DNA from: Lytechinus pictus
Lineage: Eukaryota
Assembly (NCBI RefSeq): GCF_037042905.1
Contig: NC_087258.1
Coordinates: 682,001-746,000, forward strand
Reading direction: 5' to 3'
Length of the DNA stretch: 64,000 bases
Both the position numbers and the translations under genes were made by a program. The notes beneath the pieces were generated by a model. It was given only the letters and a program-made list of their open reading frames with translations. It ran no database searches and was not told the DNA's origin. Positions 4,708 through 25,700 of the stretch are shown in pieces. Each line of letters starts with the position of its first letter. Within the stretch, counting starts at the first letter, position 1.

Positions 4708-7700
4708 CTGTAGATATGTATTGTGGAAAAAATAGGAAAATAATGAATATTTTTTGTGCATACCAACACAACTACTGTGGTGAATGTTGGGTCCATTTTT
4801 TTCAGGCAAAAGGATTATAAAATATATCGATATTGAAAAAACACGAATGAATTGCCAATAAGGCCTGATAGCATACATTTCTTGCCTTCCATGACGTCAA
4901 TGTCATGAACCAATAGACATAATGAATGTTATTTGGTTAATTCAATATGGGTATCTAATTAAAAATTTCTTAACATTAGACGTCAAGATTTTATTTATAG
5001 TAAAATCATACACATGCTTACTAGGTTTTATGACACAATTAATACCTTTTATACAGTCTCTTGCCGTTTCCTTTTTTTTCTTTACTAGTGATCTTCTGTC
5101 ATATTTATAATTATAAAAGCGTCAGCATGCAATTTGGTTTGACTAGATTTGTGGATGTATCTAGAACTGAAACAAGATTTGCAACTGAGCTTACATTTTC
5201 ACTAGAATCTGATGGATCGAACCTATTGTGATCGCTCCTCCGTCTCTGTTTAGACATGATTACGAAGATGAGAGTGCCACAAGAAGCCAACAACCAGAGT
5301 AGCGATGCTCCTCCTACGCTACTAGCAAATATTACCCACCAAGCTGTCTGGGTCCCTTCATAAATCATGATTTTAAAAGAGAGGGATAATATATGTTATG
5401 TGAAAAGTAGATGGCAAAGGAAGGGCAATGAACAAAGACCTGAAAATGATGGATATACAATGAAAGACGAAAGACAAAGTAGAAGTACTCATTGACTAGG
5501 GGACAATAAACAAGGAGATAAGAGTCCTGATTATACATAAAATTACACTTACTCTCGAGAGAAAACATGGTAAAGGGGCACTCCAAAGGGACTGATCCCT
5601 ATTATAACTCCGTGAGGAGTGTGAATCGGGATGAGGTAAGCTCATTTGCATTTAAAGAGTATATTGCGGGAGATCTTCGTATCAAAAACCATTAAAATAA
5701 TAACATGTAAATAAGTATAAAAAATAATTCATATCGTGTTATCCTGATGTCACTATTGTTTCCTCTCATTAAAAAAATAAATACATGCCAGGTCATTCCA
5801 AAGCTTTCATGATTGTGGTGGTGTATTTGCGAACTTGGCAATTCCCCAATTTTGGAATACTTCATTTTGGTTCAATGCCAATAAATGATGGGTTAAAGGT
5901 CATAATTATGTTGGGCCTTATGAAACTCTACCAGATTTATATACCTCTTTCTTCAGTAGTCTCTTGTTGATCAACTGTAACAATTTTTGTTTTAGTTAAC
6001 GGCCCAGTCCTGTCTGGCGAGGTTGTAGTAGATTCTTCTTTCATTACGGTTGTGTCAAGAATATGGGTAAGAGGAACCATTTGAGTGGTTGACTGGTAAC
6101 TTGACAGACGGTTTGTGGTTGTTGTAGTCTCACCAAGGGTCAATGAGGTAGGTACGTTATCTGAGGAATCGCTGGAGATATCATTGCTTGTTGACATGAC
6201 TGAGATATACTGCGAGGTAGTTTTGAGTCCTAGAGTGACAGTCAAGTCACTTGAAGGACCGCCCTCTGTTGTGTCAGTAGTGCCTTCAAATAATGTAGAG
6301 AACGATGTAAGTGTTCCTTTCATGGAAACGTCTAATGTACTTGTCGGAAGGGTTTCCTCATGTGCAATGGTTGTAGGGTTTATTGTAGCTGAACTCGAAT
6401 GGATTCTGTCTGATCTTAGTGTGTCCATTACTATTTCTGTTGTGAGTCTTTGTACGGTTTGAGGATATCCAGTAGACTGTTCGCTGACACCGATAGTTTC
6501 CGGAAAGACTGCCGTTTGATCTGTTTCTCCAACGCCTGTATTTTCGGTAGGAGTTTGGAAGTTTGAAACAGGTGTTGCAGAACTTTTGGTTTCTGGCAAC
6601 ACGTTTGTGGTGGGATCACTGGTTACTGGATGCCATGTTGCCTCGGATGTTCTTAACGGTGGCATAAAACTATTAAGAGTTGTGAGGATATCATCGGTAG
6701 CACGGAAATCGGTTGTCCATTCGTTTGTGGGATCAGTTGGAATCGTATCACTCGTCTCCAAAACTGCCAGCGAAGTCTTGTCCAAAAAAGTATAATCGGT
6801 TGATTTGTGAACCGTAATAATATCTTTAATGGTAGTATAGACGCTATAGCCAACTTCGGAATAAGAAATAGGCGAACCGGAGGTTATCGAAATGTGCGAC
6901 TCCGTCGTAAATACCCGAGTTCCACCCGTTAAGTCATCGGTTGTCCCTGGTGCTAATGAGGTAGTTGAATATGAAGTTGTAGATGTTCCTTTAAGAAACG
7001 AAATGAGATGGCATTAATTTTAGCTGTAAACTCAAATGCGTAATATATGTTTTAAATAATACGGATATATATTTTCTACCCACTGTTTAATACCTCATGA
7101 CGGAAATGGGATGCATACCGTGTTTTTCTATTTTGAAGAAGACTGATTTATCTCGCCCTATTTTGGTATTTTTGTGGAAACCAATCTTAATATGCCTTCT
7201 TGCCTAATATGTCATGACTTTCTGTATTGTACTGTCTTTATTTAATCACGGTAAAACTTAATATTTCAGTCAAACAGACTGCTTTTCAGCAGGTCCGTGA
7301 ACATTAGAAAACGTGTAAAAGTGAGACACTACGAAAATATTTAAGGTATTACAGTAACACATACAAAACATACATATACATATTGCATGAAAATCAATGA
7401 TTATCAAAACTACATAAAACCACAGTGCAAAGAGAAATTATATAAATTATCTAGCCCCCCCCCCCCCCCTTATGGTAAAACATTGTTTAAAATTAAGGTG
7501 TTACCTGTGCAAGTTGGAACTTCCGTAGGTGACCATATACCATCTGTACATACCATGGTCTCCGCACCTTGAAGAATGGGTCTTGTGGTAGAAGAGCAGT
7601 TAAAACGGATCTCACTAGAATGTTCATAAAATGTCGTAGATGAATTTCCTGTTGAAGTCAGGAAGTGCAGCACGTCCGGAGGAACTTCAGGCACCTCACA

Positions 7701-10700
7701 GTATCCTGTGTTTAAAAAATGATGAGGCACAAATGGTTGATTTTTGTAACATAGCAAACCCTTGCAATAACATAACTTTTGCATTTTAAAAACCAAATCC
7801 CATTTCAAATTCTACGTCAATAATGTAAACAATACTTTTGCAGATCAAGTTCACGATTTTACATAGCATTTACTCACTCAGAGATTATATCCGATCGGTA
7901 TGATGACTAAAGAATGATTTCTTTTCACAATAATGAAATGTTATCCCTTTGGCTAAGCTTAGTCTTGCATCATTATCAACTACGCCATCTACGGCAAATT
8001 TCGGGTGAATATTGCAGCCTGTCAAGTGAAAACTTAAACACATAAAAGTTAATGATTGTCAAAAAGAACGTTGAAATTTGGTATTCTATATACCACTCAA
8101 ACCATTTCCCAAAACTCAGCCGACAATACTAGTGGTGCATTATTTAAGGCTAAATTTCTAGCTAATGGCACGGTGCGAATACAATTCACTTTCCAGGATT
8201 CATAATCATTGATTTCAAATCAACTAATCATCTAAGCATTTTTAGTGTATATTTTGTGAGTGTGTGTTAAGTGTTACCTGTAAAGTAAAAATAATTTCAT
8301 GGTAGAGTCGGGAAATTACGAACCAGTTTGGTATGCTAACAATGTAATACATGCATTACTCTTGCCCTGATTAATTTAAGTTTATTTTCAAATTGTAATT
8401 CTCGTGATGTTGCCTCTATCAATAATTGTCCTCTTAAGGTACTCGGTTATTATTAACAATGGTATCGATATGCCAATTGAGATACTGTAGACCTGTATTG
8501 TATTTCAATTAGAATGACAAAATGCAATGCATAATTGGTTTGTCAGCTCTGGTATTATAATGCTCAACAATAGATGGCGTACTGTAGCAGAATCGTTGAG
8601 ATGGGTCAGGGTACCATCTAGAATCCCAACAGAATGTAAACCAGATCATAGGAGTTGAGATGGTGTCATTACAGTAGAGAAGAAAACTATCACCGTGGAT
8701 GAATTGGTTATCAAGCCGGGATTGCTGCGGGATCACATGTATATCATCGTCCAGGATTGTAGGATAAGTTGTACAATCTGAAAGTAGGAGAAACAAACGC
8801 GAAATATAATATGTCTTAATGAAAGCAAGCATAGTACTTTATATATTTCTTTTCTTTCACACGGAAAGTAAGTCTTTCCTAATCTCTCTCTGGAACAGTA
8901 ATTTGTGAAAAGCATTGAAAATCACAATATAATATATATACAGTCATGTTTGAAGATCATCTAAATACATATGAGCGATTCCAAGAAAACGCGGACATTA
9001 AAAATAAAAAACAATATTAGATCTATTTCAAATCTGAATCAATTTTTTTCCATTCAAACTCATATGGGAGTTCAGATTAAGGGGGGTCATAATTAACCTC
9101 ATTTTTTCTTACGCATCTTATTGGAGAATTTGAACCATACCAAAAATTATATATTACATATATATATTATTATTTTTTTTTTACTTCAATTTAAGAGAAA
9201 GCTATTGTCTTTTTGCATTTCGATAATCTGAAGGCAATCATTTTAGATCATATTAAAGGAAAATTTTCAAATATGAATTACGGAAAATTTTTAAAATTTG
9301 TGGTGGCGGACAAACCGTAATGCTACTGCCTGTAATGCGACTAACCGGAGTTTGTCAAAACTCAAAGTTGCTCTCCCAGTTCAAATGTCTTATTTGAGAC
9401 TTCAATATGTAAGTAATGATTTGCAGGTATTGAAATTGATGAAAGTGTTTTGGTTTGAAAGAACTATTAAAAAGTAATCAGTCACTTTTTTCCATGTTCT
9501 TTTTGTGTAATGCGACTGACCGATTTTTGGGCCGTTATGGCCTCTATAATATACAGCCTACAATCATTCTTTATGTTTTGTTTTAAAGCCTCTCTTGCCA
9601 AAGTAAATAGACAGTATAAACTTGGTAGAAAGACTCGTCCGTTTAAAACTGACAGCACCAAGTATAAAAAAAACATGTAAAATTGTATTGCAAATGACCG
9701 TGGAATCGCCCATATGTATTTTTTTCATACTACTGAACACAAGGATACCTTTTCTGGATTAACTAGGAAATGGACCGAGGGCTATATGACTTTTCGCTCT
9801 GATTCGCGACCACCAGTTAAATGCAATTAAGGAGTATTTCCAGGCTTCAACGTCAAAGACACCTTTCCGGTAGTGTTGTAATTATGCTTGCTAACATGTA
9901 AGAAAGACATGAATCACCTGAGGATTACAGACCAAGCAGTTATCCATATATCTAAAGATTTATGAAACAAAACCAAAGGCTAAAAAATCGACATTGCCAT
10001 TGATAATTCTTCCGGTATTAAGCATCATTTTCTGTATCACTGCTAGTTGAGTGACGACGCAAGACGCAAGAGGAGGGGCTAGTAAAGAACTTCTTCTAAA
10101 ATATTAATTATTTCAAAAAATTCCAATAAAATAAACCGTTAATTACCAGAGTTGACAAAAACATATCGTGTAAATAAAACTAACATGCTGATTCTTGATA
10201 AAAATTAATAGAATCTTACTATGGCCGTCCGGGGGCAGCGTGAAGTATTCTTGGGTGAACACGGGTTGTGGTTCCAGTGTAGAAGCTGTATATTCGCTCG
10301 ATCCAGATACTGCAATTCGTGAATGAAAAATGAAGATATATATTTTTTTAAATAATACTTTCGAATATAACATAATCTTTGCATTTCTCATCAAACTGAT
10401 TTTTTTCAAACCCATGGGAAATAGCACTACATCGAAAATATTCAATTATTATCATTACTTTATCTGAATCGATCAAAGGTAATCAAGATTTGGTACTTGG
10501 CTTGTAATATTAACTACGTTCTGGAATCATCGGGGCTTTTATAACGATACACTGCATTTGTCACCACGTAGAAAGTGACCCATTAGCATTCAATTTTATT
10601 TAATTCATTTTACGATAACACAGAAATAAAATTCATTGGAAACGCAAAACACATCATTATATTCTAAAGAATATGGGAAATACTTAAGTGAATATACATA

Positions 10701-13700
10701 ATACCAAGAATTTATGTCGACATTACTAGCCGGGTTGCAAATTTTGTGAATCGTGATCCCCAACAAAGTGCATCATTGGTAAGGATTGAAGCAGATGCAT
10801 AATTATCATAAACATATCACATACTTATACATAGAGGTAATGCATCTGGACTCCATGTCCCGTCGATACAAGCCAGACCTGTTGGACCAGTCAATAACCC
10901 ATTGGTACACGTGAATTCCAGCACAGAGTCGTGAGTATACATCCCTGAATGAAACAGACCCGTGGAGTGGGTGTATGTCACCGGTGCAGATGTTAATGGT
11001 GGGTCGCATGGAGCTGCAAAAAAATTGTGCATTGCAAATATATATTGTTGCAGTAAAAAACACACTTATCCTCCTATCCCATCCCACACACACACACCCA
11101 TTCAAGCAGCCCAACCCAACACACACACGTGATCACCAGCATGAACTTGCCCTCAATTTATTCATGTTTAATGTCAATCACAACGATACCCTTCTGCAGT
11201 TGGTCTATGACTATTCTTGAGAAAAAATCATGAACATACTGCTCATTAATTCATACGTGTTTTCATATCTTCATCTGATATTAGAATTTTCTATTTTTGT
11301 GCAGGATACATTTCATGATTAAACATAAATCGCAAATATAATCCAATTAAATTGGATTCTTATAAAAACTATGTGGCACGTCACAGACTATATTGAATAT
11401 TATTAAAACACGTTTTCAGGAAGTTTTTGAAAACGAATACATATTTTTACAAGTAAATTGAATAATAAGACATAGTTTCAAACGTTCTAGCAAGGTCAGG
11501 AAACTATAGGCGTCATTGGCCCAAATAAACTATGCCCTATAAAGGCGAAATACATTATGATAGTTAAAACTCACTTATGAATGGAAATGGCTAATGGAAA
11601 AATCGCCAACAATGTCTAGATTTTTGTTTTAATATCAACTTTGCTTTCTGAGGAATCAAATTGAAATAATTAAAATGAGACCATTGGTTACCATAACATG
11701 CATTTCCTGATATATCAGGATCCCATGCCCCGTCAGTACAGACAGAAAAGGCTGTTCCTCTCGTCGCGTAGGGTATGGGTGGACAATAGAGAAGAATAAA
11801 ATCATCAAGAATATATTCATCTTTCGATGGGTTTACTAGAATATCCGAATCCAAGTTAGCAGGATGAGTACAGACGGGATCTATATGGGGAAAATCATTA
11901 TAATCTCTTTAATTTTGTGGAGGATAGTTCTTGTAGTTAAAAGGGAGCAATATGATATACCAGGTCAGAAAGTTACAGGTATACATCAACTGTTTTGTAA
12001 TAGACTTGAGATACTTAATCACATTTTTGCAATTGAAAAATGTGACTAAACCACGACGATCATTCTCATTTTTTTTCACACAAGTATAAGACTTGGCTTG
12101 GCTGAAATAACTCATACAATTATTGACCCCTAAATTATCATATTGCTATCGCCTTCTGGCATTGATTCGAAATATATTTTGAATTAAATAATAATACGAT
12201 TGTCTTGCTTTTCAATACCATTTACTAACTCGGAAAACTCTGTTTTGCCAATAATGACACATGATACGATTATTCTTAAAGCTAATCCACCTCTGTATGC
12301 CTTACCTTCACACGTCGGGTAACTGAGTTGATCCCACACACCATCGACACATACTGGGCTAGATGTGTTACTCAAAACTTTCGAAGTCACTTTACACTTG
12401 AAGGAGAGCTCGGCACCATGTTTGTACTCTGGTAGTGTGCCCCCCGTGGATTGCTCATGATGTGTTAGATGCGATGGCACTGATGGCGCGGAGCATGGAG
12501 CTGCACAAAAATAATGGAAGAAAGGGTAGAATTTGAAAATTAAAGAATTTTGTTTAAGCAAACATAGCATTTAAAAAGACAAGGATAAAAATAAACACGA
12601 TATTTGGTACATCCTTACCATAACATGCCTTGTTGGAGATGTCGGGTAGCCACCCTGTCTCCGTACATTGAGAGAATACCTCGCCCACAGCAGTGTAAGG
12701 TGGTGGAGGACAAGATAGGATGAGAAAATCGCCAACGTCATAACGATCCTTCGTCGTGCTCAATATGACGTCAGGGTCAAAGTTAACTGGTAGCACGCAC
12801 CATGTTTCTACAAAATACATGACGATAGAAATGAATTCATATTTTGAATGTTATATACTGAATGGCGCACATTTTGAAATAATTCAGAATCTTTACAAAA
12901 TCTCTATTAGTCAAAGCTGCCCTAACATTGAGGCTTCTAGAAGAATTGTGCTTGTTCTAAAGTTATGAAACCCTCTGGGAAATAAACTTAAAATAATCTT
13001 AAGTGTAGAACGAGGTGATTGTGATGAGAAACATTGATAAATAGTAATCGAATGGACAATCCCTTTCTATCTCTGTACTAAAGGAAATACTGATTTAAGA
13101 TACCAACAATATAACATACCTTGAGGATTCGTTGTAAATGGATATTTGTCCGATGTTTTACTCGTGGAAACCATCATTGTGGTACCTCTGTCCGGCTCTG
13201 TTGGTTCGGTAGTCTCCATCGATGTGCTAACGGTATCAGGCGTATTTGTCCCTGTTGTCACGGGGTAAAGGTATTGTGTAGTCATTGTAGGGATTCCATT
13301 GATCTGAGTAGGAGTTTCCGTCCGTGTGTGTGGTACAGAGGTCATAAAAGATGAGAGAGTTTCGGTCACTGAACCGCTTTGTGAAGAAGCGATCGTCATT
13401 GTTGTATGTTCCATGTCTGGAGTTGTAGTGCCATAAACAGTTGTGACCAAGGTATCAAAGGTTACGCCCATGCTTGATGTTTCTGACGACGGTTGGTCCG
13501 TACCATCAGATTCCGTTTGTACGACTGAGGTAATTGACTCCATCCCTTGTGTCTGCTCTGTTTGACGGACTGGTGTCACATGAGACACGTGATCTGAGGT
13601 AGGAAGATAATCCCTTGTGCGTGATGATGTTGCAGCCGTTTCTCCACCAAATGTAGGTCCCATGTCTAGGGTGGTAGCACCATACGCCGTTGTGATCAAG

Positions 13701-16700
13701 GTACCAAAGGTTAATGCATCAATGCGAGATGTTGCTGACGTCGGTTGGTTTGTTTGTTCAGCTTCAGTATGTGCTCTTATTGAGGTAATGTGCGTTGGCT
13801 CTTGTGTCTGCTCTGTTTGACGGATTGACGTCATACGAGACACGGGGTCTAATGTAGTAAGAGTGACTCTTGTGTTTGATGATGTTGCCGCGGTTCCTTC
13901 ATCGGAAGTAGGTATCATGTCTGCGGTGGTAGCGCCATAAGCCGCGGTAAGCAGGGTACCAAATGTAACGTCAAAACTTGACATAGCTGACGTTGGTTGA
14001 TTCATTTCATCAGATTCCGTAGATGCGACTGAGGTAATAGGCACTGTCACTCGTGTCTGCTCTGTTTGAAGGACTGATGTCATACGGGACATGGGGTCTA
14101 ATGTAGAATGAGCGTCTCTGGTGTTTGATATCGCAGCGGTTACTTCATCAGCAGTAGGTCTTATGTCTGTGGTGGTAGCGTCATAAGCCGTTGTAAGCAA
14201 GGTACCAAATGTAACGTCAGTACGTGATGCTGTTGATAACGGTTGGTCAGTTTCATCAGATGTAGTATGTAACGCGAATGTGGAAGTGGATCCCAACACG
14301 TTTGTCTCGTCTGTTTGACGTACTGATGGTAAGGCACTTACATTATCATCGGTTCCTGATGACGTTACATCGATTTCGCCATCAGTTGACTGACTGGGAT
14401 TAAATGTAGTCCAGATTGTAGGGTCTGTGGCCTGTGTCTTTTCTGTGCCGAAACTCGTTGTGCTTCCGAAATCAGTGAGTTCTGGTGAACTAAGCTCTTC
14501 AGTCGCTGTACTTGACGTTTCACTCGCCAACAACTCAGAAAATGCATAAGTGCTGTCTCTAGCGGTTGTTAACGGAAATTCAGTGTCCCGTTCAGTTGTC
14601 CTATAACTGTATGTCGTAGAAGATACTGGAAGATAATAATTTGACAGGATCAAGTTAATGAGTCTATTGTTAGATTGTGGCTGCGTTGAACATGTATCAG
14701 AACCTTATTTCGCCTTACATATTTTTTTTTCTTTCGGTCTGTGCTTTTATTATCATTGCTATCATTATCTGCATTAATATGTGAGCCCGGACATTCCAAA
14801 ATCACTAAATAATTCTGAGACATGAACAATCTTTCAAGCACTTTTCATATATAGGAGAGATTTCAATACTGATAAAACTTAATGCCATTGGATGGTTTTA
14901 TTTTGACATGTAGGAAATCGGAGAGGGGGTTGATTCAGCTTCATTTGATCACCCAATCACGTGACATCCGCAGACTTGTGTTTGTTTGGGTGTTTTTTTT
15001 CTTTTTTTACAGAAATAATAATGCTAAATATGCTAATCCATGCATGAAGTATTACATAATTTCACTTTCATTCACTGTTGCATATAGCATGAATGGAAAA
15101 TATTCTTTGAATGCAGTTAACAACTCTCATTTGTTGCGCATTCCGATGGTTCTATACATTTTATTCTAATGGGGCATTGCAAAAAATTTGCGATCAATTG
15201 CAAGTCTATTTTCGTTCCCGAAATCAAGCATATACCATGCAATTAATTTCAAATTTGCGATTGATTTCTAATCTGCTCCATAAGACAAGGAGTGATTTGC
15301 TATAGTTAAAAGTGATCAATCAATTGTAAGATTGCAACAGAATATTTGCGATTGATTGCAAATATTTTCTTGCAACACCCCCTCCCCCCTATGTCTGATA
15401 AGTATATTGATATTATTTTTTAAAAAAGGTCATACGACCTGACGAACCTTCGCAAGTTGGAACGTTTGATGGATTCCATGTCCCGTCCCTGCATAACGAC
15501 GAGCTCGGTCCAATGAGAGTCGATCTATCCGGTATGGTGCAATTGAAATTGATGTTCTTTCCGTGAAGATAGTACGTGTCTGAAGATAGCCCTGTATCAC
15601 TCTCGGCATGAAGAATGTTGTCTGCGACGGACGGAGCGGTGCATGTTCCTGCAATTATGAAAGTGTGGATATTTCACATAAATCTGTGACGTCAATGTAG
15701 TAATTACAGTCCATTAAAAGTAGCAAAATCATTAATGCCTGAATTTTCCAATGGTTAGGACTGTCCTTATTTATTATTTCTCTCGGTAAAAACAGCAAAG
15801 AAGATATGAGAGTGGAATAGCTACCCCTTCATTCAATGCATGTTTGTGTTTGAAGCGTCCGCCCCATTCTTCCGATTTTCAAATGATTTTAAAAGAAATG
15901 ATTGATGGGTTTTAACATTCAATCGCAGGTTTTCTATATTGAAAAAAAGAATGCCCATGCTTAGTTTTCTGGTTTTCATTATTCACATCCATCACAATAT
16001 GCATAAAATTTACGCCAATATTGAACACGATGATTATTTTCCAAGAATAAATATGTGAATTATTTGTATCAAAATTATTAATTTAAAAGGGATAGAAATA
16101 ATCCATGTCCAACCATGCCTAATTGCACTTAAAGGGAAATGTATACCTCTAGAATTATCTCGAAAACGTATTCCGAACGAGTATGGAAGTTTGGGGGCTG
16201 ATCATGTTAAATTAATAGGACACAAATGGCATTTGTTACGTTATTGTATAGGTTTACTGACAATATTTAGGGGCAGCTGAAGCCGTCCAACCCCTCCCCC
16301 CCCCACCCCCCCCCCACCCTCCGCATTTGGTTTAGCAGCCCAATCATATACCGTGAATTAATTAATAAACGTACTGTAGCAGAATCGTTGAGATGGGTCA
16401 GGGTACCATCTCGAATCCCAACAGAATGTAAACCAGATCATAGGAGTTGAGATGGTGTTATTGCAGTAGAGAAGAAAACTATCACCGTGGATGAATTGGT
16501 TATCAAGCCGGGACTGCTGCGGGATCACGTAGATATCATCGTCCAGGATTGTAGGATAAGTTGTACAATCTGAAAATATGAGATGCAAATAAGAGAGGCA
16601 AGGAAACCTAATTTAGTAAAAGTTATAGACGATGAGCCCTTTATCCTCGTCAAATTCCAACTTTACACGATGTTTTTTTTGCTTTGTTTTGTTTTTTGTG

Positions 16701-19700
16701 AAAATATTTCAATCTTCGCATTGACATCTACTATCTTGTGACCATTATATTAATTGGTACACATTGGTGACACAACGCAAAATGAAAAGGAATAAACCTC
16801 ATTGTTAACCATTAACGACACGGTAAGAAATTTTTAATATTTCTTTCATAATGAGTGATCAATTGATTATATTGTATAAACGATACAAAACATGAAAGAA
16901 AGAAGCCTAGCTTACTCTCTCCATCGGGTGGAAGAGTGAAGTACTCTTGGGTGAAGATGGGCTTGGGTTCCGATGTGGTGACTGCCTCCGTTGTCCCAGC
17001 AACTAGAATAATTCAAAATGTAAATGACTGCTAAACAGTATTCGATCAATAAATACAGCTGAAAATCGTCTTACACGGTACTAAACGAACCCCGTATACA
17101 TGTGAAAATAAATGATCAACAGTGCGTACTTTTTTATTATAATTGAAATTCACCCCCCCCCCCTTCCCTTAAAAATATAAAAATGTTTGAAGACAACAGA
17201 ATCTTGATCAGCTATTCTTCTTGAGCACACACCAATCCCAAGAAATGATCGTTTAATTGTAAATATTTTTATTTCAATTTCAGACTACGGATCGGATACA
17301 TTTATGACTATAAAAAAAATTGGCAGAAAAATGCGCCAGTATGTTCGCAGATTTACGCATTGCTTTACTGTATGCACGACCAACGTTGCCAGAACTGGCA
17401 TAATTATGCTTTCTGGCATAATTTCGACCCTTTCAGCATAATTTGGGGCATAATAAGACTTTTTTAAGCAAAGAATCTGGCATAATAATAGCATATTTAG
17501 CATAATTTTGATATATTTGAAGATTGAAGACCTTTTTTTTTTTTTTTTGCTTGTAATTTTTTTTTTCTGGTACGAAATCCTTTATTTGTGATTAAAGACC
17601 TTTTTTTTTTTTTTTTTTTTTTTTTGCTTGTCAATTTTTTTTGGCGGACGGTTTTGCCCCCCCCCCCCCCCCGGCCCCCCCTTGTGGAAAATCCTAGGGT
17701 TGGCATAATTTTTCGCGATTTAGCATAATTTCGCTGCTCCTCTGGCATAATTGGAAAGGGTCACCAGCCGATATCAAAGTCGTTCGTAGCTTGCAAACAG
17801 TTTCATGAAGCACCCATCTTGAGTCAGATAGTTTTGATAACTTACACATGCAACTTGGTTGATCACCAGGAGTCCATGTCCCATCCACACAGGTCAGAAG
17901 AGAAGGCCCAGAGAGCACTCCTCGGTTACAGCTGAATGACAAGACTGAGTCGTGGGTATACTTGTTATCCCTGACTAGGCCTTTGGTCATAGTGAACATT
18001 AATGGTCCAGACGAAACTATTGCATCGCAAGGCGCTGTCAGAAGAAAATAGCGAACTTTGCATTATGCACAAATATTTTGTCTAAAAAAAACAGAAACGT
18101 AAAACTACAATCGGTGTTGAAAAAATAAACTACACCAATTTTAATAATAGTGAACACAATATTAATCGTCGGAGAGTGGCAAATTAGTATAAATTTAAGA
18201 ATTTTTTAATTACCTTTATAAAATTCGATTTTGGAAATTTATATCCCTATCAACCTTGCATATTTTGTCTTGAAACCCTTGCCATTCTAATGACACTCTT
18301 TACTTTGAAAATGATATAAATTTCCATTTGTTTTATTTGGTATAATACTGAAATACAATTTGTTTGTATATTCACTTTGTTTTCAAAGAAATATAATTTT
18401 GCCAGTTTCCGATTGTAGAATCGGGTGGTCCTTTACAGAGCCCATTTGTATAATGCGAATTAGACTCAGATTCAGATGTCAGCAGGATAATCAACATTTA
18501 CCATAACAAGCATTGTCTGATATATCTGGCTCCCACCTTCCCTCTGTACATACAGAAAAAGCTGTCCCTCTCGTGGCGTATGGTACAGGAGGGCAGTAGA
18601 GAAGTATGAGGTCATCTAACATGTATTCGACTTGAGACGGATCGATTCGGATATCCGGATCCAGATCGATAGGAATGGTGCACACTGGGTCTGGATATTA
18701 AAATAAAAAAAGAAAGGGGCCCGTATTCTGAAGTCAGGTTTAACTTAGACCATAGTTTAACTCTGTGCTAAAATTATGGGAAGCCAAAAGTCTCAAACTT
18801 TTTATTCAGTTGTATGTTTCTTATGTTCACTGTGCTCTTTCTTGATTCATCGATGGTGAAGACAATTATCTATTTACACTTCCTAGACAATTATCAATGA
18901 TTTGAGAGCCAAGTGAGCTGAAATATGATATCTCTACTGTTAGTGATTTATGTAATAATTGGTTATCCGTAAATGTTTACTCATTTATTGACAAAACATG
19001 CAGGCGCTTAAGACATGGCAATAACATTTTCTTCAAGAGCATGACAGTGCTTTCTTCATAAAAAATAATTTCCCCTGGGTGAGGATACGCATAGGGATGG
19101 AAGAAGATGCAAGTGGGATTCAGAAAAAAAAAAAAAAATGCAAATCGAGATACATGTATAGGAAAATGATAAAACGACAAAAAGGATGAGAGGGAAAAAA
19201 GAGGAAATAGACCAAAAATGTAAAATGTAAAGCATAATGTGCGCTTTTGCTATTGCATGAATATTTACTTATAAAGAATTAAAGATTACTAGTCCTCCTC
19301 CTCAATTTGTAATTCACGTCAATTTATGAATGAATTTGTCATATTAGGATTTGGAAGCTCTTCATCTTATTCTTTCTTTCTCTCCCAGGTGAAAATTTTT
19401 GCACTAAAAATTTGACAAAAGCATAATCAGTTCAAATGCTAAAACTAACAATGAACTAACAATGAACTAAAAATTGAGGAAATAGAATGAGAATTTACGT
19501 TGAGACATCCACCTAAATAAAACACGTTTGTTTGGTTACAAATCCCTCTCAATCTTACACCTACCCCCCTAAAAATATTAATAACTTTCCTACCTTTTCG
19601 CCAGTTATTTATTTTTTTTCTGGCGAATAGCGCAGTAGAAAAGGATACATATAAAGAAAAAAAAGACAGGTTGACCTTATATTTTTATTTACAGCAAACA

Positions 19701-22700
19701 TACTTATGGGGCGCTTACCCTGGTGAGCATCAACATTAAAATATTTGAAAAAGATGTATAAATAACAGGGGCCGCTGAGCGTTTTTAATAATGGAGGGGT
19801 TGAGCTGAATGTGGGAGGGAGTGATCCGGCCCCCCAAAATCACAAATTTATGGACTTCGTGTTTTTGTATACGTTTGCTGATTGGGGGGGGGGGGTGGAC
19901 TGACCCCCCCCCCTACCGACTCCAACGCCTCTGTACTGTTTAATTGAACGATTAAAAGATAGAGACAAAACGTGATACAAATCTTTCATGATTTATTTAT
20001 TACTTTTGTTTTCAGTTGTGAAAACCCCCAGAACGTTTAAAAAAATAATAAAATGAAAGAACAGAATAAAACACTTATAATTTAGATGCTATAATTACAA
20101 TAGATGAAAATAATTTACTTTCTCTCATTGTGACGAACAGTAATCGGTAGCATGGCTATTTTGGAGGAAAAAGGGAGATAGATAAATGAAACGTAGAACG
20201 AGATGAGGAGAGCGTTGGGAGATGTGATTTCAGATCTACTATTTGAGTCACATTTACCCCCTTCCCTCTTTGAAATTGCAACAGGAAAAAAAATAGAATA
20301 GTGGTGTGCAATCTTCAGGAACAAAATTATTTTTATTACAAACTATATTTTATGAAAAGAAGATACCGAAGGCGTTTTTTGTGAAACATTGAGGCAACCA
20401 TCTTAAGGCCCAGAAATCACGAAATAGTTTCGGACTTTTGTTGCGCAGCATCATCATCGTACTCGCAAGGGAATGTTCACCCTATTGTATTCATTCTGGA
20501 AAATAAAGGTAGTTGGTATGCTGTGATTTCACTAAAAACGAATTATCGTCATAATTATACACTTTGCAAATGATCTATATACAAGGAGGTAAAAGAGACC
20601 ATTCATGAGTAGCGTGACAATAGGCAATGAAAAGAGCACTATAGAGCAGACAAACAAAGCGGTATCGATCGAACCCGACCTGTCCGCGTGTGCTGATTGC
20701 CCTTACGCATTTTTGTACACAGTGCGTATTGACTTGGAAAAAAGCAAAGATTTGACAAAATAACACGACTTTTTCCTCGTAAATGTCTTAACTATTCTGT
20801 TGATTTGAGAAGCGAAACCTTTATTTCTAGAAAGAAAAATGTCTGATCTTTCATCTTTACATTTATTAAAAATCCTGAAAAGACATGTACATCAGTTTGG
20901 CGCATTTAGCAATTGATTCGGAAAACACCGCAACGGATCCAAATGCCAGCAATGTACCAAAACGGCTCCGCAGCAGGGAGAGGTATCCGGTTTCGCGGGC
21001 CCGCGACTTTAAACCTGAGTTTAAGTTAAACCCGAATTCAGAATACAGGCCAGAGATTTTAACTAAATCGGATAGGGACCCCCCCCCCCCCCCTTCCTCC
21101 AAAAAAGTGTAAAAAAAAAAAAAAAAAAAATCAGGGGCCCGTTTCATAAAGAGTTACAACTGTTGTAACTTTGCCATTATGGCAACTACCATTGGAAACC
21201 TTGATTCTGATTGGCTGATGAGCCCTGTTATCATAATAGTCCTATATGAAAGGGCCCCAGGTCGACTAATAAATCTCAAACTACCATTTTGTGAGTACCG
21301 TATACTGTGACATCCGGGTAACATCCAGTCCAGTCCCAACCAAATAAGCCAGTTCGCTATAGAAGAAGTTCGGCTCTTTATGTTTGGAATTATTATATTG
21401 GCACTTTGAACTGCCATTAGTATAAAATAGAACATATATTTTTTATTGAAATTGAAATGTTGTTTTATTTTGTATTTAGCTTATGTTATACTAGGTGTCT
21501 TGCGTTGATATTCGAAAGGCAAACAAACCTTTTTTTTATTATTGTACAAAAAAATACGTGTGATTGTGTTCTTATATCCGCTTTATATATATGCTTTCTT
21601 TGTACCTTCGCACGTTGGAAACTCTAGACCAACCCATGCTCCATCATTACAAGTGGGATTCGGCGTAGAGCTCAGTACTCGCCATGTAGTAGTACAAGAA
21701 AAAGCCAATGTGGTTCCGTGATCATACTGATCTTTGCTTTCTCCAGATGATGCATCTCCATGTGTTAGATAGGCTGGAACTCCTGGGGCAGAACAGGGGG
21801 CTGAAAAAGGGAACATAACATAATTATAGATGTCCTAAGTAATGGAACATGGCATGACTAAGAAACCACATACGACATAACCAAAGTTTATACAGATTAT
21901 GACTAACTTTCGTGATCAGAGATAATATAATACAGTGCACTATTCACTTGAAATATCTGTTTTGAATATAAAAAATATCACAAAGTTCAGTTTTTCAAAA
22001 GAATTACCACTATTCAATGTTAAATGACAAGTTCACCCCCCAAAAAAAAACATCATAGTGTGTATACAAATGAGGGGATTGATGACATCACCCACTCACT
22101 ATTTAGTTTGTATCTTATAATATGAAAAATGGAATGTTCCATTTTTCTCCTCATTAAGGGAAGTTCTATTCCTCCCTGAGCATGTGGAATTTTATGTTAC
22201 CATTTCATGGTTCAGTCAAGTTAGTCCTTAAGTATTGTAAAATTTGTAAAATCTTGAATATAGTATAATTGCATCTATAAAAAAGATATAAGGAGTAAGC
22301 GAAATCATCGACTTACATTTGCATGTCATTGAATTGTGCATACAACTACTTTGTGAAATATAAGTGAAAGTTTAAAATGTCATAACTTCCTAATTTAACA
22401 TCTGATTTTGATTGAATTTTCAGCGTTATGCTTGTTGCAATTTTCTCTATTGATTCAAATCAATATTTTTCTGGCCTCGGAGTGGACTTGACATTTAAGA
22501 AGCTTACTTAACCCTTGTTCATTACTACCGTCACTACTGACAATCCTTCTAATGTGTTGCGTCATCTTACCGTAACACGCGTTTGCAGAGAAATCTGGTA
22601 CCCATCCAAATTCTGTACACTGAGAGAATATTTCCCCAGAGAAGACATATGGAGGGGGTGGACAGTATAGGATGATGAAGTCATTTACGTCATATCGGTC

Positions 22701-25700
22701 CTTCCTCACACTTGGGTAAATGTCAGGGTCGAGCTCGACTGGCATTATGCAACCTAGGAATAAAAAGGGTATTTGCAACAGTCTTAATACAATTAAAACC
22801 AAATTATGTAAGAAACAAACCTCATTAATCACAGATGTACCAGTAATTAATATGGTGCAAGGTTTACAGTGTAAATGGTTTCATCTGCTCAAAATATCTG
22901 AAGACTTCATGTGATTGTACTTATTAAATTTAGTTGATTTTAATAATTATTCGCAGGGAGGACCGAATTAAATATTAATCAAATTAATTGCTGAAAAAAG
23001 CACGAAAAGGGAAACAAAGAAATCTATTAGATCACTAGGTCGGGCCAAGCATTTGATACAGTAGGAGCGTGGCTTTATAAAACCAAAAGTGTTCGCTTTG
23101 CTATTCAAAATACCATGGTAACGGGACTCAGCACCCAATCAAGATTTCCAGTTTTCACTCGTAATAAAACGGACCGTTATTTCTTCCAAGATATTGTAAA
23201 TGATATGAAAGTTTTCAAACAATGACTGTAAAACTGTCGTATCATACGAAGCTTATCATAATATACGAATGATACGAATGGTAACGATATCATTTTTTTT
23301 TCTTCTTCTCTTTTACCTTATTGAAACATCTTCTCATAATAAATTAACTTACCAACAAGGGCTGTTGTATGTTTTATGGTCGTTATAACAGGTTCAATAT
23401 TCTGATCGGTGGTCAACAGGACATCAGTGGTCATATTGGTTGTACGACTCGTGGCTGGTGCGGTCGATTGTCCATCGATTGTAGCAAGTAGTGCGTCATT
23501 GGTTGTTGATGTGTCTGTTGTCCCCGCTGTATTCTGTGTCGTTTGATCACTCAGTTTGTGAGTTGTTAACTGACTATTTTCATCAGTTGTCTTGGTTGTT
23601 TTAAAAGAGGATTCATCTGTTGTGATTTTAGGCGTTCCATCAGTTGTGAGAAAAGTGATAATATCAGTCAGTTTGTCAATGGTACTTTGAGTTATTTTGT
23701 CAGCTGTAGCCTGAATCAGTTCATCAGTCATAATTTGAGTCGTCCCGTCAATTGTAACATGAGTCATTCCATCAGACATTTTCTGAGTCGGTTCTTGGGT
23801 ACTGATTTGAGCCGTTTCATCAGTCGTGATATGAGTTGTTCCACTAGTTAGTTTGCTATTTGTACTCTCAGTCGTTTGATCGCTCGTGATCCGAGTCGAT
23901 TGATCAGTTGTCAGTTGTATACTTGTATCAGTTTCATCCGTCGTAATTTCAAACACTCCAGTAGTTGTAATCTTAGTCGTGTCCTTGGTATTGAATGTAG
24001 TCGTTCCATTAGTCGTCATTTTAGTTGTTTCACTCGTCTTTATTTGTGTGATGCTGTCAGTCAGTTTGTCAATTGATCCCTCAGTTGTGATCTGTGCAGT
24101 TTCGTCAGTTTTTACCTGAGTCAATTCATCGGTCAAAATATCTGTTGTCCCATCAGTTTTGATATGAGTCATCCTATCAGATGTGATCTCAGTCGGGTAT
24201 ATGAAACTGATTTGAGTCGTTGTATCAGACATTATTTCAGTGGTTCCTCCAATTAGCTTGTCATTTGTAGTCTGGACCGTTGTATCGGTTGTGATCTGAG
24301 TAATTTCGTTGGTAGTGATTCTAGTCGTTTCATCAGTCGTCATTTTAGTTGTTTCACCAGTTGTTATTTGAGTGATGATGTCAGTCAGTTTGTCAATCGA
24401 ACCCTCAGTTGTGATCTGTGCGGTTTCGCCAGTTGTCACCTGAGTCAATTCATCAGTCAAAATATGAGTTGTCCCATCAGTTTTGATATGTGTCATCCTA
24501 TCAGATGTGAACTCAGTCGGGTATATGAAACTGATTTGAGTCGTTGTATCAGACATTATTTCAGTGGTTCCTCCAATTATCTTGTCATTTGTAGTCTGGA
24601 CCGTTGTATCGGTTGTGATCTGAGTAATTTCGTTGGTAGTGATTCTAGTCGTTTCATCAGTCGTCATTTTAGTTGTTTCACCAGTTGTTATTTGAGTGAT
24701 GATGTCAGTCAGTTTGTCAATCGAACCCTCAGTTGTGATCTGTGCGGTTTCGCCAGTTGTCACCTGAGTCAATTCATCGGTCAAAATATGAGTCGTCTCA
24801 TCAGATCTAATATGAGTCATTCTATCAGATGTGGTCGCAGTCGGGTAATCGAAGCTGATCTGAGTCGCTTTAGCAGTCATTATGTCAGTGGTTCCTCCAA
24901 TTAGTATGTCATTTGTACTCTGAATCGTTGTATCGGCTGTTATCTTAGTCGATTCATAAGTAGTAACATGAGTCATTCTGTCGGACATTATCTGAGTCGG
25001 TTCTTGTGTACTAATTTGAGCCGTTTCATCAATCGTGATAAGAGTTGTTCCACTAGTTAGTTTGGTATTTGTACTCTCAGTCGTTTGATCGCTTGTCATC
25101 CGAGTCGATTGATCAGTTGTCAGTTGTATACTTGTACCAGTTTCATCTGTCGCAATTTCAAACATTCCAGTAGTTGTAATCTTATTCGTGTCCTTGGTAT
25201 TGAATGTAGTCGTTTCATCATTCGTCGTCTTAGTTGTTTCACCCGTTTTTATTTGAGTGATGCTGTCAGTCAGTTTGTCAATTGAACTATCAGTTCTGAG
25301 CTGTGTAGTTTCGTCGGTTATCACCTGAGTCAATTCATCGGTCGAAATTTGAGTCGTCCGATCAGTTTTGATATGAGTCATCCTATCAGATGTGAACTCA
25401 GTCGGGTATATGAAACTGATTTGAGTCGTTGTATCAGACATTATTTCAGTGGTTCCTCCAATTAGGTTGTCATTTGTAGTCTGAACCGTTGTATCGGTTG
25501 TGATCTGAGTCGATTCATCGGCGGTAATTTGAGTCATTCCATTAGTTGGGGTCTGAGTCGTTTCTTTGGTAGTGACTTTAGTCGTTTCATCAGTCGTCAT
25601 CTTAGTTGTTTCACCAGTTTTCATTTTAGTGATACTTTCAGTCAGATTGTCAGTTGTACTCATGGCCGTTTTATCGAATGTGATCTGTGTTGTTACGTCA

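What the first reader, a model, noticed from the sequence alone, without database searches (positions are those of the whole stretch)
8583..16569. One CCP exon pair is ~96% identical while the rest of the duplicated cassette is old
Exons 8583-8777 and 16375-16569 differ at only 7 of 195 nt by my alignment (2 amino acids), and similarity stops within a few bases of the splice sites. The adjacent pair (7505-7705 vs 15448-15648) shares only about 40-45% amino acids and pair a about 65%. Synonymous sites are also conserved, so protein constraint alone does not explain it. Inference: exon-limited gene conversion (possibly mRNA/cDNA-templated) or selected homogenisation of a binding module. This CCP is also unusually aromatic (WFTFCWDSRWY).
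Basis: partly seen in the sequence, partly recalled or inferred. Interest (0 to 1): 0.75.

Follow-up and report, generated by a model that had tools for sequence, protein, structure and literature searches.

The report
Exon-confined gene conversion between duplicated CCP exons
Two copies of one CCP (sushi) exon in a sea-urchin membrane mucin gene stay almost identical because they repeatedly overwrite each other by gene conversion, a well-documented example of a known process and not a new mechanism.

Summary
Exons 8583-8777 and 16375-16569 (minus strand) differ at 7 of 195 nt (2 aa). The other six exon pairs of the duplicated cassette are 42-74% identical in protein and saturated at synonymous sites.

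The gene is the Lytechinus pictus "mucin-3A-like" gene. Orthologous loci from L. variegatus and Strongylocentrotus purpuratus settle the cause:
- **No nucleotide-level constraint.** Orthologous copies of this exon between genera have dS 1.07-1.33, like every other exon. The two copies within the window have dS 0.14.
- **A mosaic exon.** At positions 9-35 the sequences group by copy, which is the ancient orthology. At positions 50-185 they group by genus, which is concerted evolution. The counts are 9 versus 14 sites with no overlap (P about 1e-6).
- **A recent event in L. pictus.** Exon positions 9-36 of the upstream copy were overwritten by the downstream type. Its introns stayed orthologous to those of L. 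variegatus. Identity rose from about 90% (L. variegatus) to 96%.
- **Conversion looks ongoing.** Two L. variegatus loci or haplotypes differ in very short shared tracts.

Exon limitation is expected, because only this strongly constrained exon keeps any homology. A cDNA template is neither needed nor supported. This is a new, unusually clear member of a known kind. No sequencing reads could be laid on the locus.

The parts
8583..8777 (-). Exon A''2, the CCP-like module of the downstream cassette (phase 1-1). It is the donor type for the recent conversion.
   Evidence: frame and splice sites; present in the annotated protein P0001 at residues 2160-2223; its introns are orthologous to those of L. 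variegatus A''2.
16375..16569 (-). Exon A''1, the paralogous CCP-like module of the upstream cassette. It is the recipient of the recent conversion.
   Evidence: P0001 residues 1305-1368; its introns are orthologous to L. variegatus A''1 up to position -7 and from position +6.
16534..16561 (-). Minimal recent conversion tract in A''1 (exon positions 9-36). The maximal tract is 16533-16575 (positions -6 to 37).
   Evidence: at 12 of 12 informative sites the window's A''1 carries the A''2-type state, while L. variegatus A''1 keeps the state shared with S. purpuratus A''1; a second L. variegatus locus agrees.
16529..16532 (-). Unconverted patch (exon positions 38-41) where A''1 keeps its own copy-specific states. 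It accounts for 3 of the 7 remaining differences.
   Evidence: at positions 38 and 41 the window's A''1 equals L. variegatus A''1, and A''2 equals L. variegatus A''2.
16375..16522 (-). Concerted block of A''1 (exon positions 48-195), homogenised with 8583-8730 of A''2.
   Evidence: 14 sites group by genus, all at positions 50-185; the tree of this segment splits Lytechinus from Strongylocentrotus copies with support 100/99.
8583..8730 (-). Concerted block of A''2 (exon positions 48-195).
   Evidence: Same evidence as for 16375-16522.
15448..22753 (-). CCP part of cassette 1. Exons: A1 22571-22753, B1 21606-21800, A'1 18502-18690, B'1 17846-18034, linker core 16911-17000, A''1 16375-16569, B''1 15448-15648.
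   Evidence: The order is the same in S. purpuratus and L. variegatus.
7505..12807 (-). CCP part of cassette 2. Exons: A2 12619-12807, B2 12306-12500, A'2 11692-11880, B'2 10825-11013, linker core 10215-10307, A''2 8583-8777, B''2 7505-7705. A mucin exon follows at about 5946-7004.
16573..16594 (-). Acceptor-proximal 22 nt of the intron upstream of A''1. It matches 8781-8802 at 15 of 22 positions. This is old residual homology or splice-signal constraint and is not part of the recent tract.
   Evidence: above all 60 background pairs; each flank is closer to its L. variegatus ortholog than to its paralog.

Best explanation
The two exons are paralogous CCP-like modules (A'') of an 8-exon cassette: A, B, A', B', linker, A'', B'', mucin. 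The cassette was duplicated in tandem inside one transmembrane mucin-like gene (Lytechinus pictus 'mucin-3A-like') before Lytechinus and Strongylocentrotus split.

Their near-identity comes from repeated short-tract non-allelic (intragenic) gene conversion at the DNA level. About 150 nt at the 3' end of the exon has evolved in concert in both genera. In the window's lineage a further A''2-to-A''1 event overwrote exon positions 9-36 after the split from L. variegatus.

The tracts stop at the splice sites because the introns have no homology left, and so do the neighbouring exons. Repair intermediates can therefore only start and resolve inside this exon.

The exon keeps that homology because it is by far the most constrained module of the protein. 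Selection on the protein and conversion thus reinforce each other.

Shown here: the concerted evolution, the mosaic, the direction and extent of the recent tract, and the absence of synonymous-site constraint. Inferred: homology limitation as the reason for the exon boundaries, and the repair pathway.
For: (1) Synonymous divergence. Between the window and S. purpuratus, A''1 has dS 1.33 and A''2 has dS 1.07, with fourfold identity 10/18 and 12/22. The other exons have dS 0.7-2.4. Within the window the A'' paralogs have dS 0.14.
(2) Quartet of L. variegatus and S. purpuratus copies. 9 sites group by copy, all at exon positions 9-35. 14 sites group by genus, all at positions 50-185. None support the third topology. 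P = 1.2e-6. Maximum-likelihood trees of the two segments give the two conflicting splits, each with support 100/99.
(3) Control exons A, B' and linker group by copy: 21:4:4, 23:4:3 and 8:0:1.
(4) The window's A''1 carries the A''2 type at 12 of 12 informative sites in positions 9-36. It keeps the A''1 type at positions 38 and 41, and its introns are orthologous to those of L. variegatus A''1 (89% over 16310-16650). Its apparent dS to that ortholog is inflated to 0.44, against a background of 0.117.
(5) Some derived states are shared by both copies of one species only: position 5 in the window, and positions 65 and 68 in L. variegatus.
(6) Two L. variegatus loci or haplotypes differ at positions 14, 140 and 188 in ways that copy the paralog's state.
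(7) In S. purpuratus B''2 was replaced by the B''1 type (96% nt, dS 0.11), and the flanking introns are 66-79% identical. This is DNA-level transfer.
(8) dN between genera is 0.013-0.075 for A'' and 0.11-0.33 for the other CCP exons.
(9) There is no Rfam hit and no RNA-folding signal on either strand.
(10) A review states that paralog conversion is usually exonic because introns fall below the homology threshold (PMC3966223).
Against: No reads of the window's species could be laid on the locus. The converted state of A''1 therefore rests on one assembly.

The recent tract crosses a stretch that was only about 60-66% identical. Its 5' end lies within 6-12 nt of the acceptor site, so it would have resolved in a microhomology of about 14 nt. 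That is unusual for homologous repair.

Concerted changes reach to within 8-10 nt of the exon's 3' end (positions 185 and 188), so the flanking anchor there is very short.

GC3 is not raised, so there is no sign of GC-biased conversion.

Only three species are sampled, plus one unidentified contig.
Confidence: 0.85

Rival explanations
1. The conversion is templated by RNA or cDNA. A double-strand break in one A'' exon is repaired from the spliced transcript or its cDNA, which would explain why identity stops at the splice sites.
For: Identity ends within 5 nt of the donor, and the recent tract begins within -6 to +5 nt of the acceptor. In S. purpuratus the 3' part of A'' (95.7%) and the next exon B'' (96%) are about equally similar, while the intron between them is only 66-79% identical.
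Against: In Lytechinus the exons that flank A'' in the mRNA (linker and B'') are not converted. They are orthologous at 94-98% to L. variegatus and only 48-69% identical to their paralogs. One end of the recent tract lies inside the exon, between positions 36 and 38. A cDNA offers no more flanking homology than the genomic copy does, so exon limitation does not discriminate between the two models. In S. purpuratus the intron flanks are homologous, with a gradient toward the exon (79%, 71%, 69%). Fourfold-site divergence in the exon (4/36) looks only modestly lower than that of the adjacent intron (12/57); this was not formally tested.
Confidence: 0.05
2. Nucleotide-level constraint keeps both copies alike. 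Candidates are an embedded RNA element, a dense splicing code or an antisense function.
For: Within the window, 22 of 23 fourfold sites are identical between the copies.
Against: Between genera the same exon has dS 1.07-1.33 and about 55% fourfold identity, like the other exons. There is no Rfam match in 7000-19000. Folding z-scores are +0.43 and +0.28. L. variegatus tolerates 19-20 differences in 195 nt between its two copies.
Confidence: 0.02
3. The identity is selected for. The two A'' modules must present the same binding surface, so converted alleles are favoured, and conversion is only the means.
For: A'' is the most constrained module (dN 0.013-0.075). The motif MIWFTFCWDSRWYPDP is invariant in all nine sequences. 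The module is unusually aromatic.
Against: Homogenisation is just as complete at synonymous sites, which selection on the protein does not see. The 5' third has stayed different between the copies for a very long time in L. variegatus and S. purpuratus (V/T, T/D, L/I), so identity of the whole module is not required. Purifying selection plus neutral conversion explains the data.
Confidence: 0.08
4. The identity is an assembly or polishing artefact, in which reads from one copy were used to correct the other.
For: No read-level check was possible. The 3' 150 nt of the two copies are close enough for reads to be mis-mapped.
Against: Both copies sit in unique flanks that are collinear with the independently assembled L. 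variegatus locus, intron by intron. A''1 has two private substitutions (positions 111 and 158) and keeps its own states at positions 38 and 41. The older concerted block is seen in three independent assemblies.
Confidence: 0.03

Closest known systems
Interlocus (non-allelic) gene conversion and concerted evolution of tandem paralogs, as reviewed for Caenorhabditis (PMC3966223) and described for mammalian TLR1/TLR6 (PMC2077338)
   Same: Paralogs within a species are more alike than orthologs. There are mosaic tracts with phylogenetic conflict along the sequence. Tracts are short. The process depends on local sequence identity and proximity. Conversion is usually seen in exons because introns diverge too far.
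   Different: Here the partners are two exons of one gene, 7.8 kb apart. All other homology of the duplicated unit is gone, so a single 195-nt exon is the whole substrate. Independent events can be placed on three lineages.
Long homologous repeats of human complement receptor 1 (CR1), cassettes of seven CCP modules that are partly homogenised. Recalled from my own knowledge and not tested here.
   Same: A multi-exon cassette of CCP modules is duplicated in tandem inside one gene. Some corresponding modules are nearly identical and others have diverged.
   Different: The CR1 repeats are young and similar over introns too, and unequal crossing-over changes their number. Here the cassette duplication predates the split of the two genera, and the introns share no similarity.
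RNA- or cDNA-templated double-strand-break repair, known from yeast experiments. Recalled from my own knowledge.
   Same: It would give identity that ends at exon borders.
   Different: Its diagnostic feature, co-conversion of adjacent exons across an unconverted intron, is absent in Lytechinus and not required in S. purpuratus.

Membership tests
CCP / Sushi / SCR module (Pfam PF00084) | About 60 residues with four conserved Cys and a conserved Trp between Cys3 and Cys4 | tested here: met
   Cys at module positions 1, 35, 49 and 63, and Trp after Cys3. These columns are invariant in the alignment of ten A-B units.
CCP / Sushi / SCR module (Pfam PF00084) | A match to the family profile above its curated threshold | tested here: not met
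   The A'' module alone gives no Pfam hit at E <= 0.1. B-type modules reach 18.5-19.6 bits against a cut-off of 20.7. The full-length L. variegatus protein carries only a faint precomputed PF00084 hit.
CCP / Sushi / SCR module (Pfam PF00084) | Profile-level homology to solved CCP structures | tested here: met
   A profile of ten A-B units matches complement factor H at E = 8.7e-36 over profile positions 4-125, which covers both modules. It also matches CR1, CR2 and beta-2-glycoprotein I.
CCP / Sushi / SCR module (Pfam PF00084) | CCP beta-sandwich fold | tested here: inconclusive
   The AlphaFold2 model of A''2-B''2 has pLDDT 79 overall, but only about 60-66 in A'' against about 90 in B''. All top Foldseek hits are tandem CCP pairs aligned over about 135-145 columns, with TM-scores of 0.4-0.52.
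Concerted evolution by gene conversion | Paralogs within a lineage share derived states that orthologs in another lineage lack | tested here: met
   14-15 such sites in exon positions 48-195, against 0-5 in control exons.
Concerted evolution by gene conversion | Phylogenetic conflict between adjacent segments, with flanks that keep orthology | tested here: met
   The trees of positions 1-47 and 48-195 conflict, each with support 100/99. The introns of each copy are orthologous between L. pictus and L. variegatus.
Concerted evolution by gene conversion | Homogenisation of synonymous sites without cross-species synonymous conservation | tested here: met
   dS is 0.14 within the window and 1.07-1.33 between genera.
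Concerted evolution by gene conversion | Conversion tracts that segregate within a species | tested here: inconclusive
   Two L. variegatus loci 1.4 Mb apart are 94-96% identical. They may be haplotypes or a recent duplicate. They differ at positions 14, 140 and 188 in a way that copies the paralog's state. No population sample was available.
cDNA/RNA-templated conversion | Co-conversion of exons adjacent in the mRNA while the intron between them is skipped | tested here: not met
   In Lytechinus the linker and B'' exons next to A'' are unconverted. The S. purpuratus pattern is compatible with this model but not diagnostic.

The most novel reading that the evidence does not exclude
The exon borders of the tracts are more than a passive homology limit. 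Two mechanisms could produce this. Repair could use the spliced transcript as template. Alternatively, the G-rich run 53-85 nt downstream of A''1 (a G-quadruplex-type motif on the coding strand, also present in L. variegatus) could make A''1 a recurrent break site and recipient. Selection would then keep two identical aromatic binding modules in one mucin.
Probability: 0.1. Interest if true: 0.6.

Novelty: new member of a known kind. Interest (0 to 1): 0.35.

Why it matters
This is a clean natural example of how concerted evolution can persist in a single 195-nt exon long after the rest of a duplicated unit has diverged beyond recognition. Events can be dated on three lineages, and tracts can be mapped to a few nucleotides.

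It matters in practice for annotating and aligning reads in echinoid mucin and CCP genes. The identical 3' ends of the two exons make splice junctions ambiguous. One L. variegatus gene model joins A''1 directly to B''2, possibly for that reason.

It matters for molecular dating, because this exon would give a wrong age for the duplication.

It also flags the aromatic A'' module as the most constrained part of the protein, and therefore the most likely functional part. It does not reveal a new mechanism.

Tried and rejected
- **Embedded RNA.** Rfam at permissive thresholds over 7000-19000 found nothing. Folding either strand of the exon gave z-scores of +0.43 and +0.28. An embedded structured RNA is rejected.
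- **Repeat or mobile element.** Only two copies exist in the 811-Mb genome, by DNA and by protein search.
- **Read-level validation.** The look-up of sequencing runs returned only runs holding 4-5% of the sampled words, and none was clearly from this species. Expression, splicing and assembly could therefore not be checked with reads.
- **Finding more species.** The search for homologous proteins with the genomic ORF P0004 found only P0004 itself. Searches with P0002 and P0001 added only L. variegatus proteins, so no further echinoid species were reachable.
- **GC-biased conversion.** GC3 of A'' is 0.45-0.59, within the range of the other exons at 0.27-0.60. There is no signal.
- **Pfam.** It does not recognise A'' on its own. 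CCP membership rests on the profile search against solved structures and on a model of low confidence for this module.
- **P0003.** This is a 1051-aa repetitive protein of unknown origin that matches the core of A'' in 19 stretches. I did not pursue it.
Full report
**What is there.**
The finding lies in a minus-strand gene. Stop-to-stop frames with a four-Cys/Trp pattern, protein self-comparison and inspection of splice sites define a cassette of exons in the order A, B, A', B', linker, A'', B'', followed by a large Ser/Thr-rich mucin exon. The cassette is present twice. All twelve CCP-type exons are phase 1-1 with canonical AG/GT sites.
- Cassette 1: A1 22571-22753, B1 21606-21800, A'1 18502-18690, B'1 17846-18034, linker about 16911-17000, A''1 16375-16569, B''1 15448-15648.
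- Cassette 2: A2 12619-12807, B2 12306-12500, A'2 11692-11880, B'2 10825-11013, linker about 10215-10307, A''2 8583-8777, B''2 7505-7705.

A library search with the 64-aa module returned the annotated protein of this very locus, P0001 (2309 aa). It is named mucin-3A-like of Lytechinus pictus.

**Checking the observation.**
- The two A'' exons differ at 7 of 195 nt and at 2 of 64 full codons.
- By the Nei-Gojobori method the pair has dN 0.013 and dS 0.14, with 22 of 23 fourfold sites identical.
- The other six pairs have 42-74% protein identity. Their fourfold identity is 25-30%, and dS is either not computable or above 1.4.
- The contrast is not chance. The Fisher test gives p = 5e-29. No 192-nt window with 7 or fewer mismatches appeared in 20,000 site permutations, where the minimum seen was 38.
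- Apart from a 75% hit for the A' pair, no DNA similarity links the two cassettes, and the introns share nothing.
- The genome holds exactly two copies of this exon.
- Past the donor only GTACG is shared. Before the acceptor 15 of 22 nt match, more than in any of 60 unrelated exon pairs.

**Is it a CCP?**
Pfam does not call A'' on its own, and the B-type modules fall just under the Sushi threshold. A profile of ten A-B units from three species matches factor H, CR1, CR2 and beta-2-glycoprotein I across both modules (E = 8.7e-36). An AlphaFold2 model of A''2-B''2 is confident for B'' (pLDDT about 90) and weak for A'' (about 62). Its Foldseek hits are all tandem CCP pairs. I treat A'' as a divergent CCP module. 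It is unusually aromatic, with 19-20% F+W+Y and three Trp.

**Related loci.**
- S. purpuratus: protein P0002, locus L003 from GCA_000002235.4.
- L. variegatus: protein P0007, locus L005 from GCA_018143015.1.
- L. variegatus, second place: protein P0008, locus L006, 1.4 Mb away on the same chromosome and 94-96% identical to L005.
- An unidentified 984-nt contig, L004, from run SRR16156427.

Both species have both cassettes in the same order. L005 is collinear with the window through exons and introns at about 82-89% identity. That also makes an assembly duplication or collapse in the window very unlikely. Exons A, B' and linker group by copy across genera (21:4:4, 23:4:3 and 8:0:1 informative sites). 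The cassette duplication is therefore older than the split of the two genera.

**The decisive test.**
It is not found.
- Between the window and S. purpuratus, A''1 has dS 1.33 and A''2 has dS 1.07. Fourfold identity is 10/18 and 12/22. These values are indistinguishable from the other exons, which have dS 0.7-2.4. L. variegatus against S. purpuratus gives the same picture.
- Synonymous sites of this exon are therefore free to change. They are alike only between the two copies inside one lineage.

**Anatomy of the concerted evolution**.
- In the quartet of L. variegatus and S. purpuratus copies, nine sites group by copy, all at exon positions 9-35. Fourteen sites group by genus, all at positions 50-185. 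None support the third grouping. The chance of that perfect separation is 1.2e-6.
- Maximum-likelihood trees give {A''1 of Lv, A''1 of Sp, X} against {both window copies, A''2 of Lv, A''2 of Sp} for positions 1-47. For positions 48-195 they give {Strongylocentrotus-like} against {Lytechinus}. Each split has support 100/99.
- So the 3' 150 nt has been homogenised independently in both genera. The 5' third kept two ancient types.

**What is special in the window.**
- L. variegatus A''1 and A''2 differ at 19-20 of 195 nt, in both of its loci. The window's copies differ at 7.
- At all 12 informative sites between positions 9 and 36, the window's A''1 carries the A''2 type. At positions 38 and 41 it keeps the A''1 type.
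- Its introns are orthologous to those of L. variegatus A''1 up to position -7 and from position +6.
- Its apparent dS to its positional ortholog is inflated to 0.44, against 0.117 for 689 codons of the other twelve exons.
- An A''2-to-A''1 conversion therefore happened after the L. pictus / L. variegatus split. The minimal tract is 16534-16561 and the maximal tract is 16533-16575. Position 140 suggests that the same or another event also touched the 3' block.
- Of the seven remaining differences, positions 38 and 41 are old copy-specific states. Position 39 is copy-specific across genera (His in A''2 of the window and of S. purpuratus). Positions 56, 107, 111 and 158 are private changes.

**Signs that conversion continues.**
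- Position 5 is derived in both window copies only. Positions 65 and 68 are derived in both L. variegatus copies only.
- The two L. variegatus loci differ at positions 14, 140 and 188 such that a copy takes its paralog's state or both copies change together.
- In S. purpuratus the history differs. B''2 was replaced by the B''1 type (96% nt, dS 0.11). The start of the mucin exon is about 85% identical between cassettes. The introns around B'' are 66-79% identical, with a gradient toward the exon. This shows transfer of genomic DNA, introns included.
- The contig L004 has the upstream intron of Sp A''2. Its exon switches type near position 21. Its downstream intron matches both S. purpuratus copies.

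**Why the exon borders.**
This step is inferred. In Lytechinus no homology exists outside the exon, in the introns or in the neighbouring exons of the mRNA (linker 69% and B'' 48% nt identity). Any homology-dependent repair, from DNA or from cDNA, can only begin and resolve inside the exon.
- The exon-limited pattern therefore does not discriminate between templates, and a cDNA template is unnecessary.
- The neighbouring exons are unconverted and one tract end lies inside the exon, so nothing positively supports a cDNA.
- The 150-nt block at 97-98% identity is the likely seed.
- That block persists because this module is under the strongest purifying selection in the protein (dN 0.013-0.075 against 0.11-0.33). 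The motif MIWFTFCWDSRWYPDP is invariant in all nine sequences.
- A review of paralog conversion makes the same general point about introns and the homology threshold (PMC3966223).

**Points that remain uneasy.**
- The recent tract crosses a stretch that was only about 60-66% identical. It ends in about 14 nt of shared sequence at the acceptor.
- Concerted changes reach to within 8-10 nt of the donor.
- No GC3 excess is seen.
- No reads could be laid. The runs found held only 4-5% of the sampled words.

**Verdict.**
This is concerted evolution by recurrent short-tract gene conversion, confined to the one exon that still offers homology. It is a new and well-resolved example of a known process, and it is not a new kind of system.

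Noticed in passing
window 17846-18034 and 11692-11880: The annotated L. pictus protein P0001 omits exon B'1 and exon A'2. Both are intact in the window, with canonical phase 1-1 splice sites, and both are included in the L. variegatus model P0008. This is either alternative exon skipping or an annotation gap.
   Followed up: partly
L005:14971-15165 joined to L005:22930-23127 (protein P0007): One L. variegatus gene model joins A''1 directly to B''2 and skips eight exons. The last 35 nt or more of the two A'' exons are identical, so spliced reads are ambiguous. It may be a mis-join or a real cassette-skipping isoform, since all the exons are phase 1-1.
   Followed up: no
L003:13963-14163 vs L003:21539-21739, and the mucin exon after them: In S. 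purpuratus B''2 has been replaced by a B''1-type sequence (96% nt). The start of the mucin exon is about 85% identical between cassettes, and the flanking introns are 66-79% identical. In Lytechinus the B'' pair shares only 42% of its amino acids.
   Followed up: yes
L003:16838-17028: The S. purpuratus B2 exon aligns in two pieces that are out of frame with each other, and it is absent from protein P0002. It is probably a disabled exon.
   Followed up: no
L005 and L006 (L. variegatus CM031028.1, 3.96 Mb and 5.38 Mb): The whole gene is present twice, 1.4 Mb apart, at 94-96% identity including introns. This could be a recent segmental duplication or a second haplotype placed in the assembly.
   Followed up: partly
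window 11692-11880 vs 18502-18690 (A' pair): The A' pair shows no clear orthology signal across genera (6:5:7 informative sites). The paralogs are 72% identical in nt, which is as close as the orthologs at 73-74%. This could be the trace of an older period of conversion that has since ceased.
   Followed up: partly
window 16290-16322: A long C-rich run lies on the + strand, which is G-rich on the coding strand with four or more G-tracts. It sits 53-85 nt downstream of the A''1 donor site, and L. variegatus has a G-run at the same place. It might be a break-prone site next to the recipient exon. This is speculative.
   Followed up: no
window 13403-14328, 23612-25851, 45841-46556: Tandem repeats with spacings between copies of about 250, about 324 and about 42-126 nt lie in large Ser/Thr-rich (mucin) exons at 70-91% identity. 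These are further internal repeats of the same gene and a neighbouring gene.
   Followed up: no
protein P0003: A 1051-aa protein of unknown source is made of 19 repeats containing LLWCNLRPLLWFSFCRDSHY. This resembles the conserved core of A'' (LLYCN..ISTPMIWFTFCWDSRWY), with E = 1.9e-49 summed over the stretches.
   Followed up: no
window 1969-2229: A further A-type CCP exon lies downstream of both cassettes, with another mucin-like frame at 388-1473. In the L. variegatus model P0008 the matching sequence follows the transmembrane and cytoplasmic part, so it may belong to the next gene or to a read-through model.
   Followed up: no
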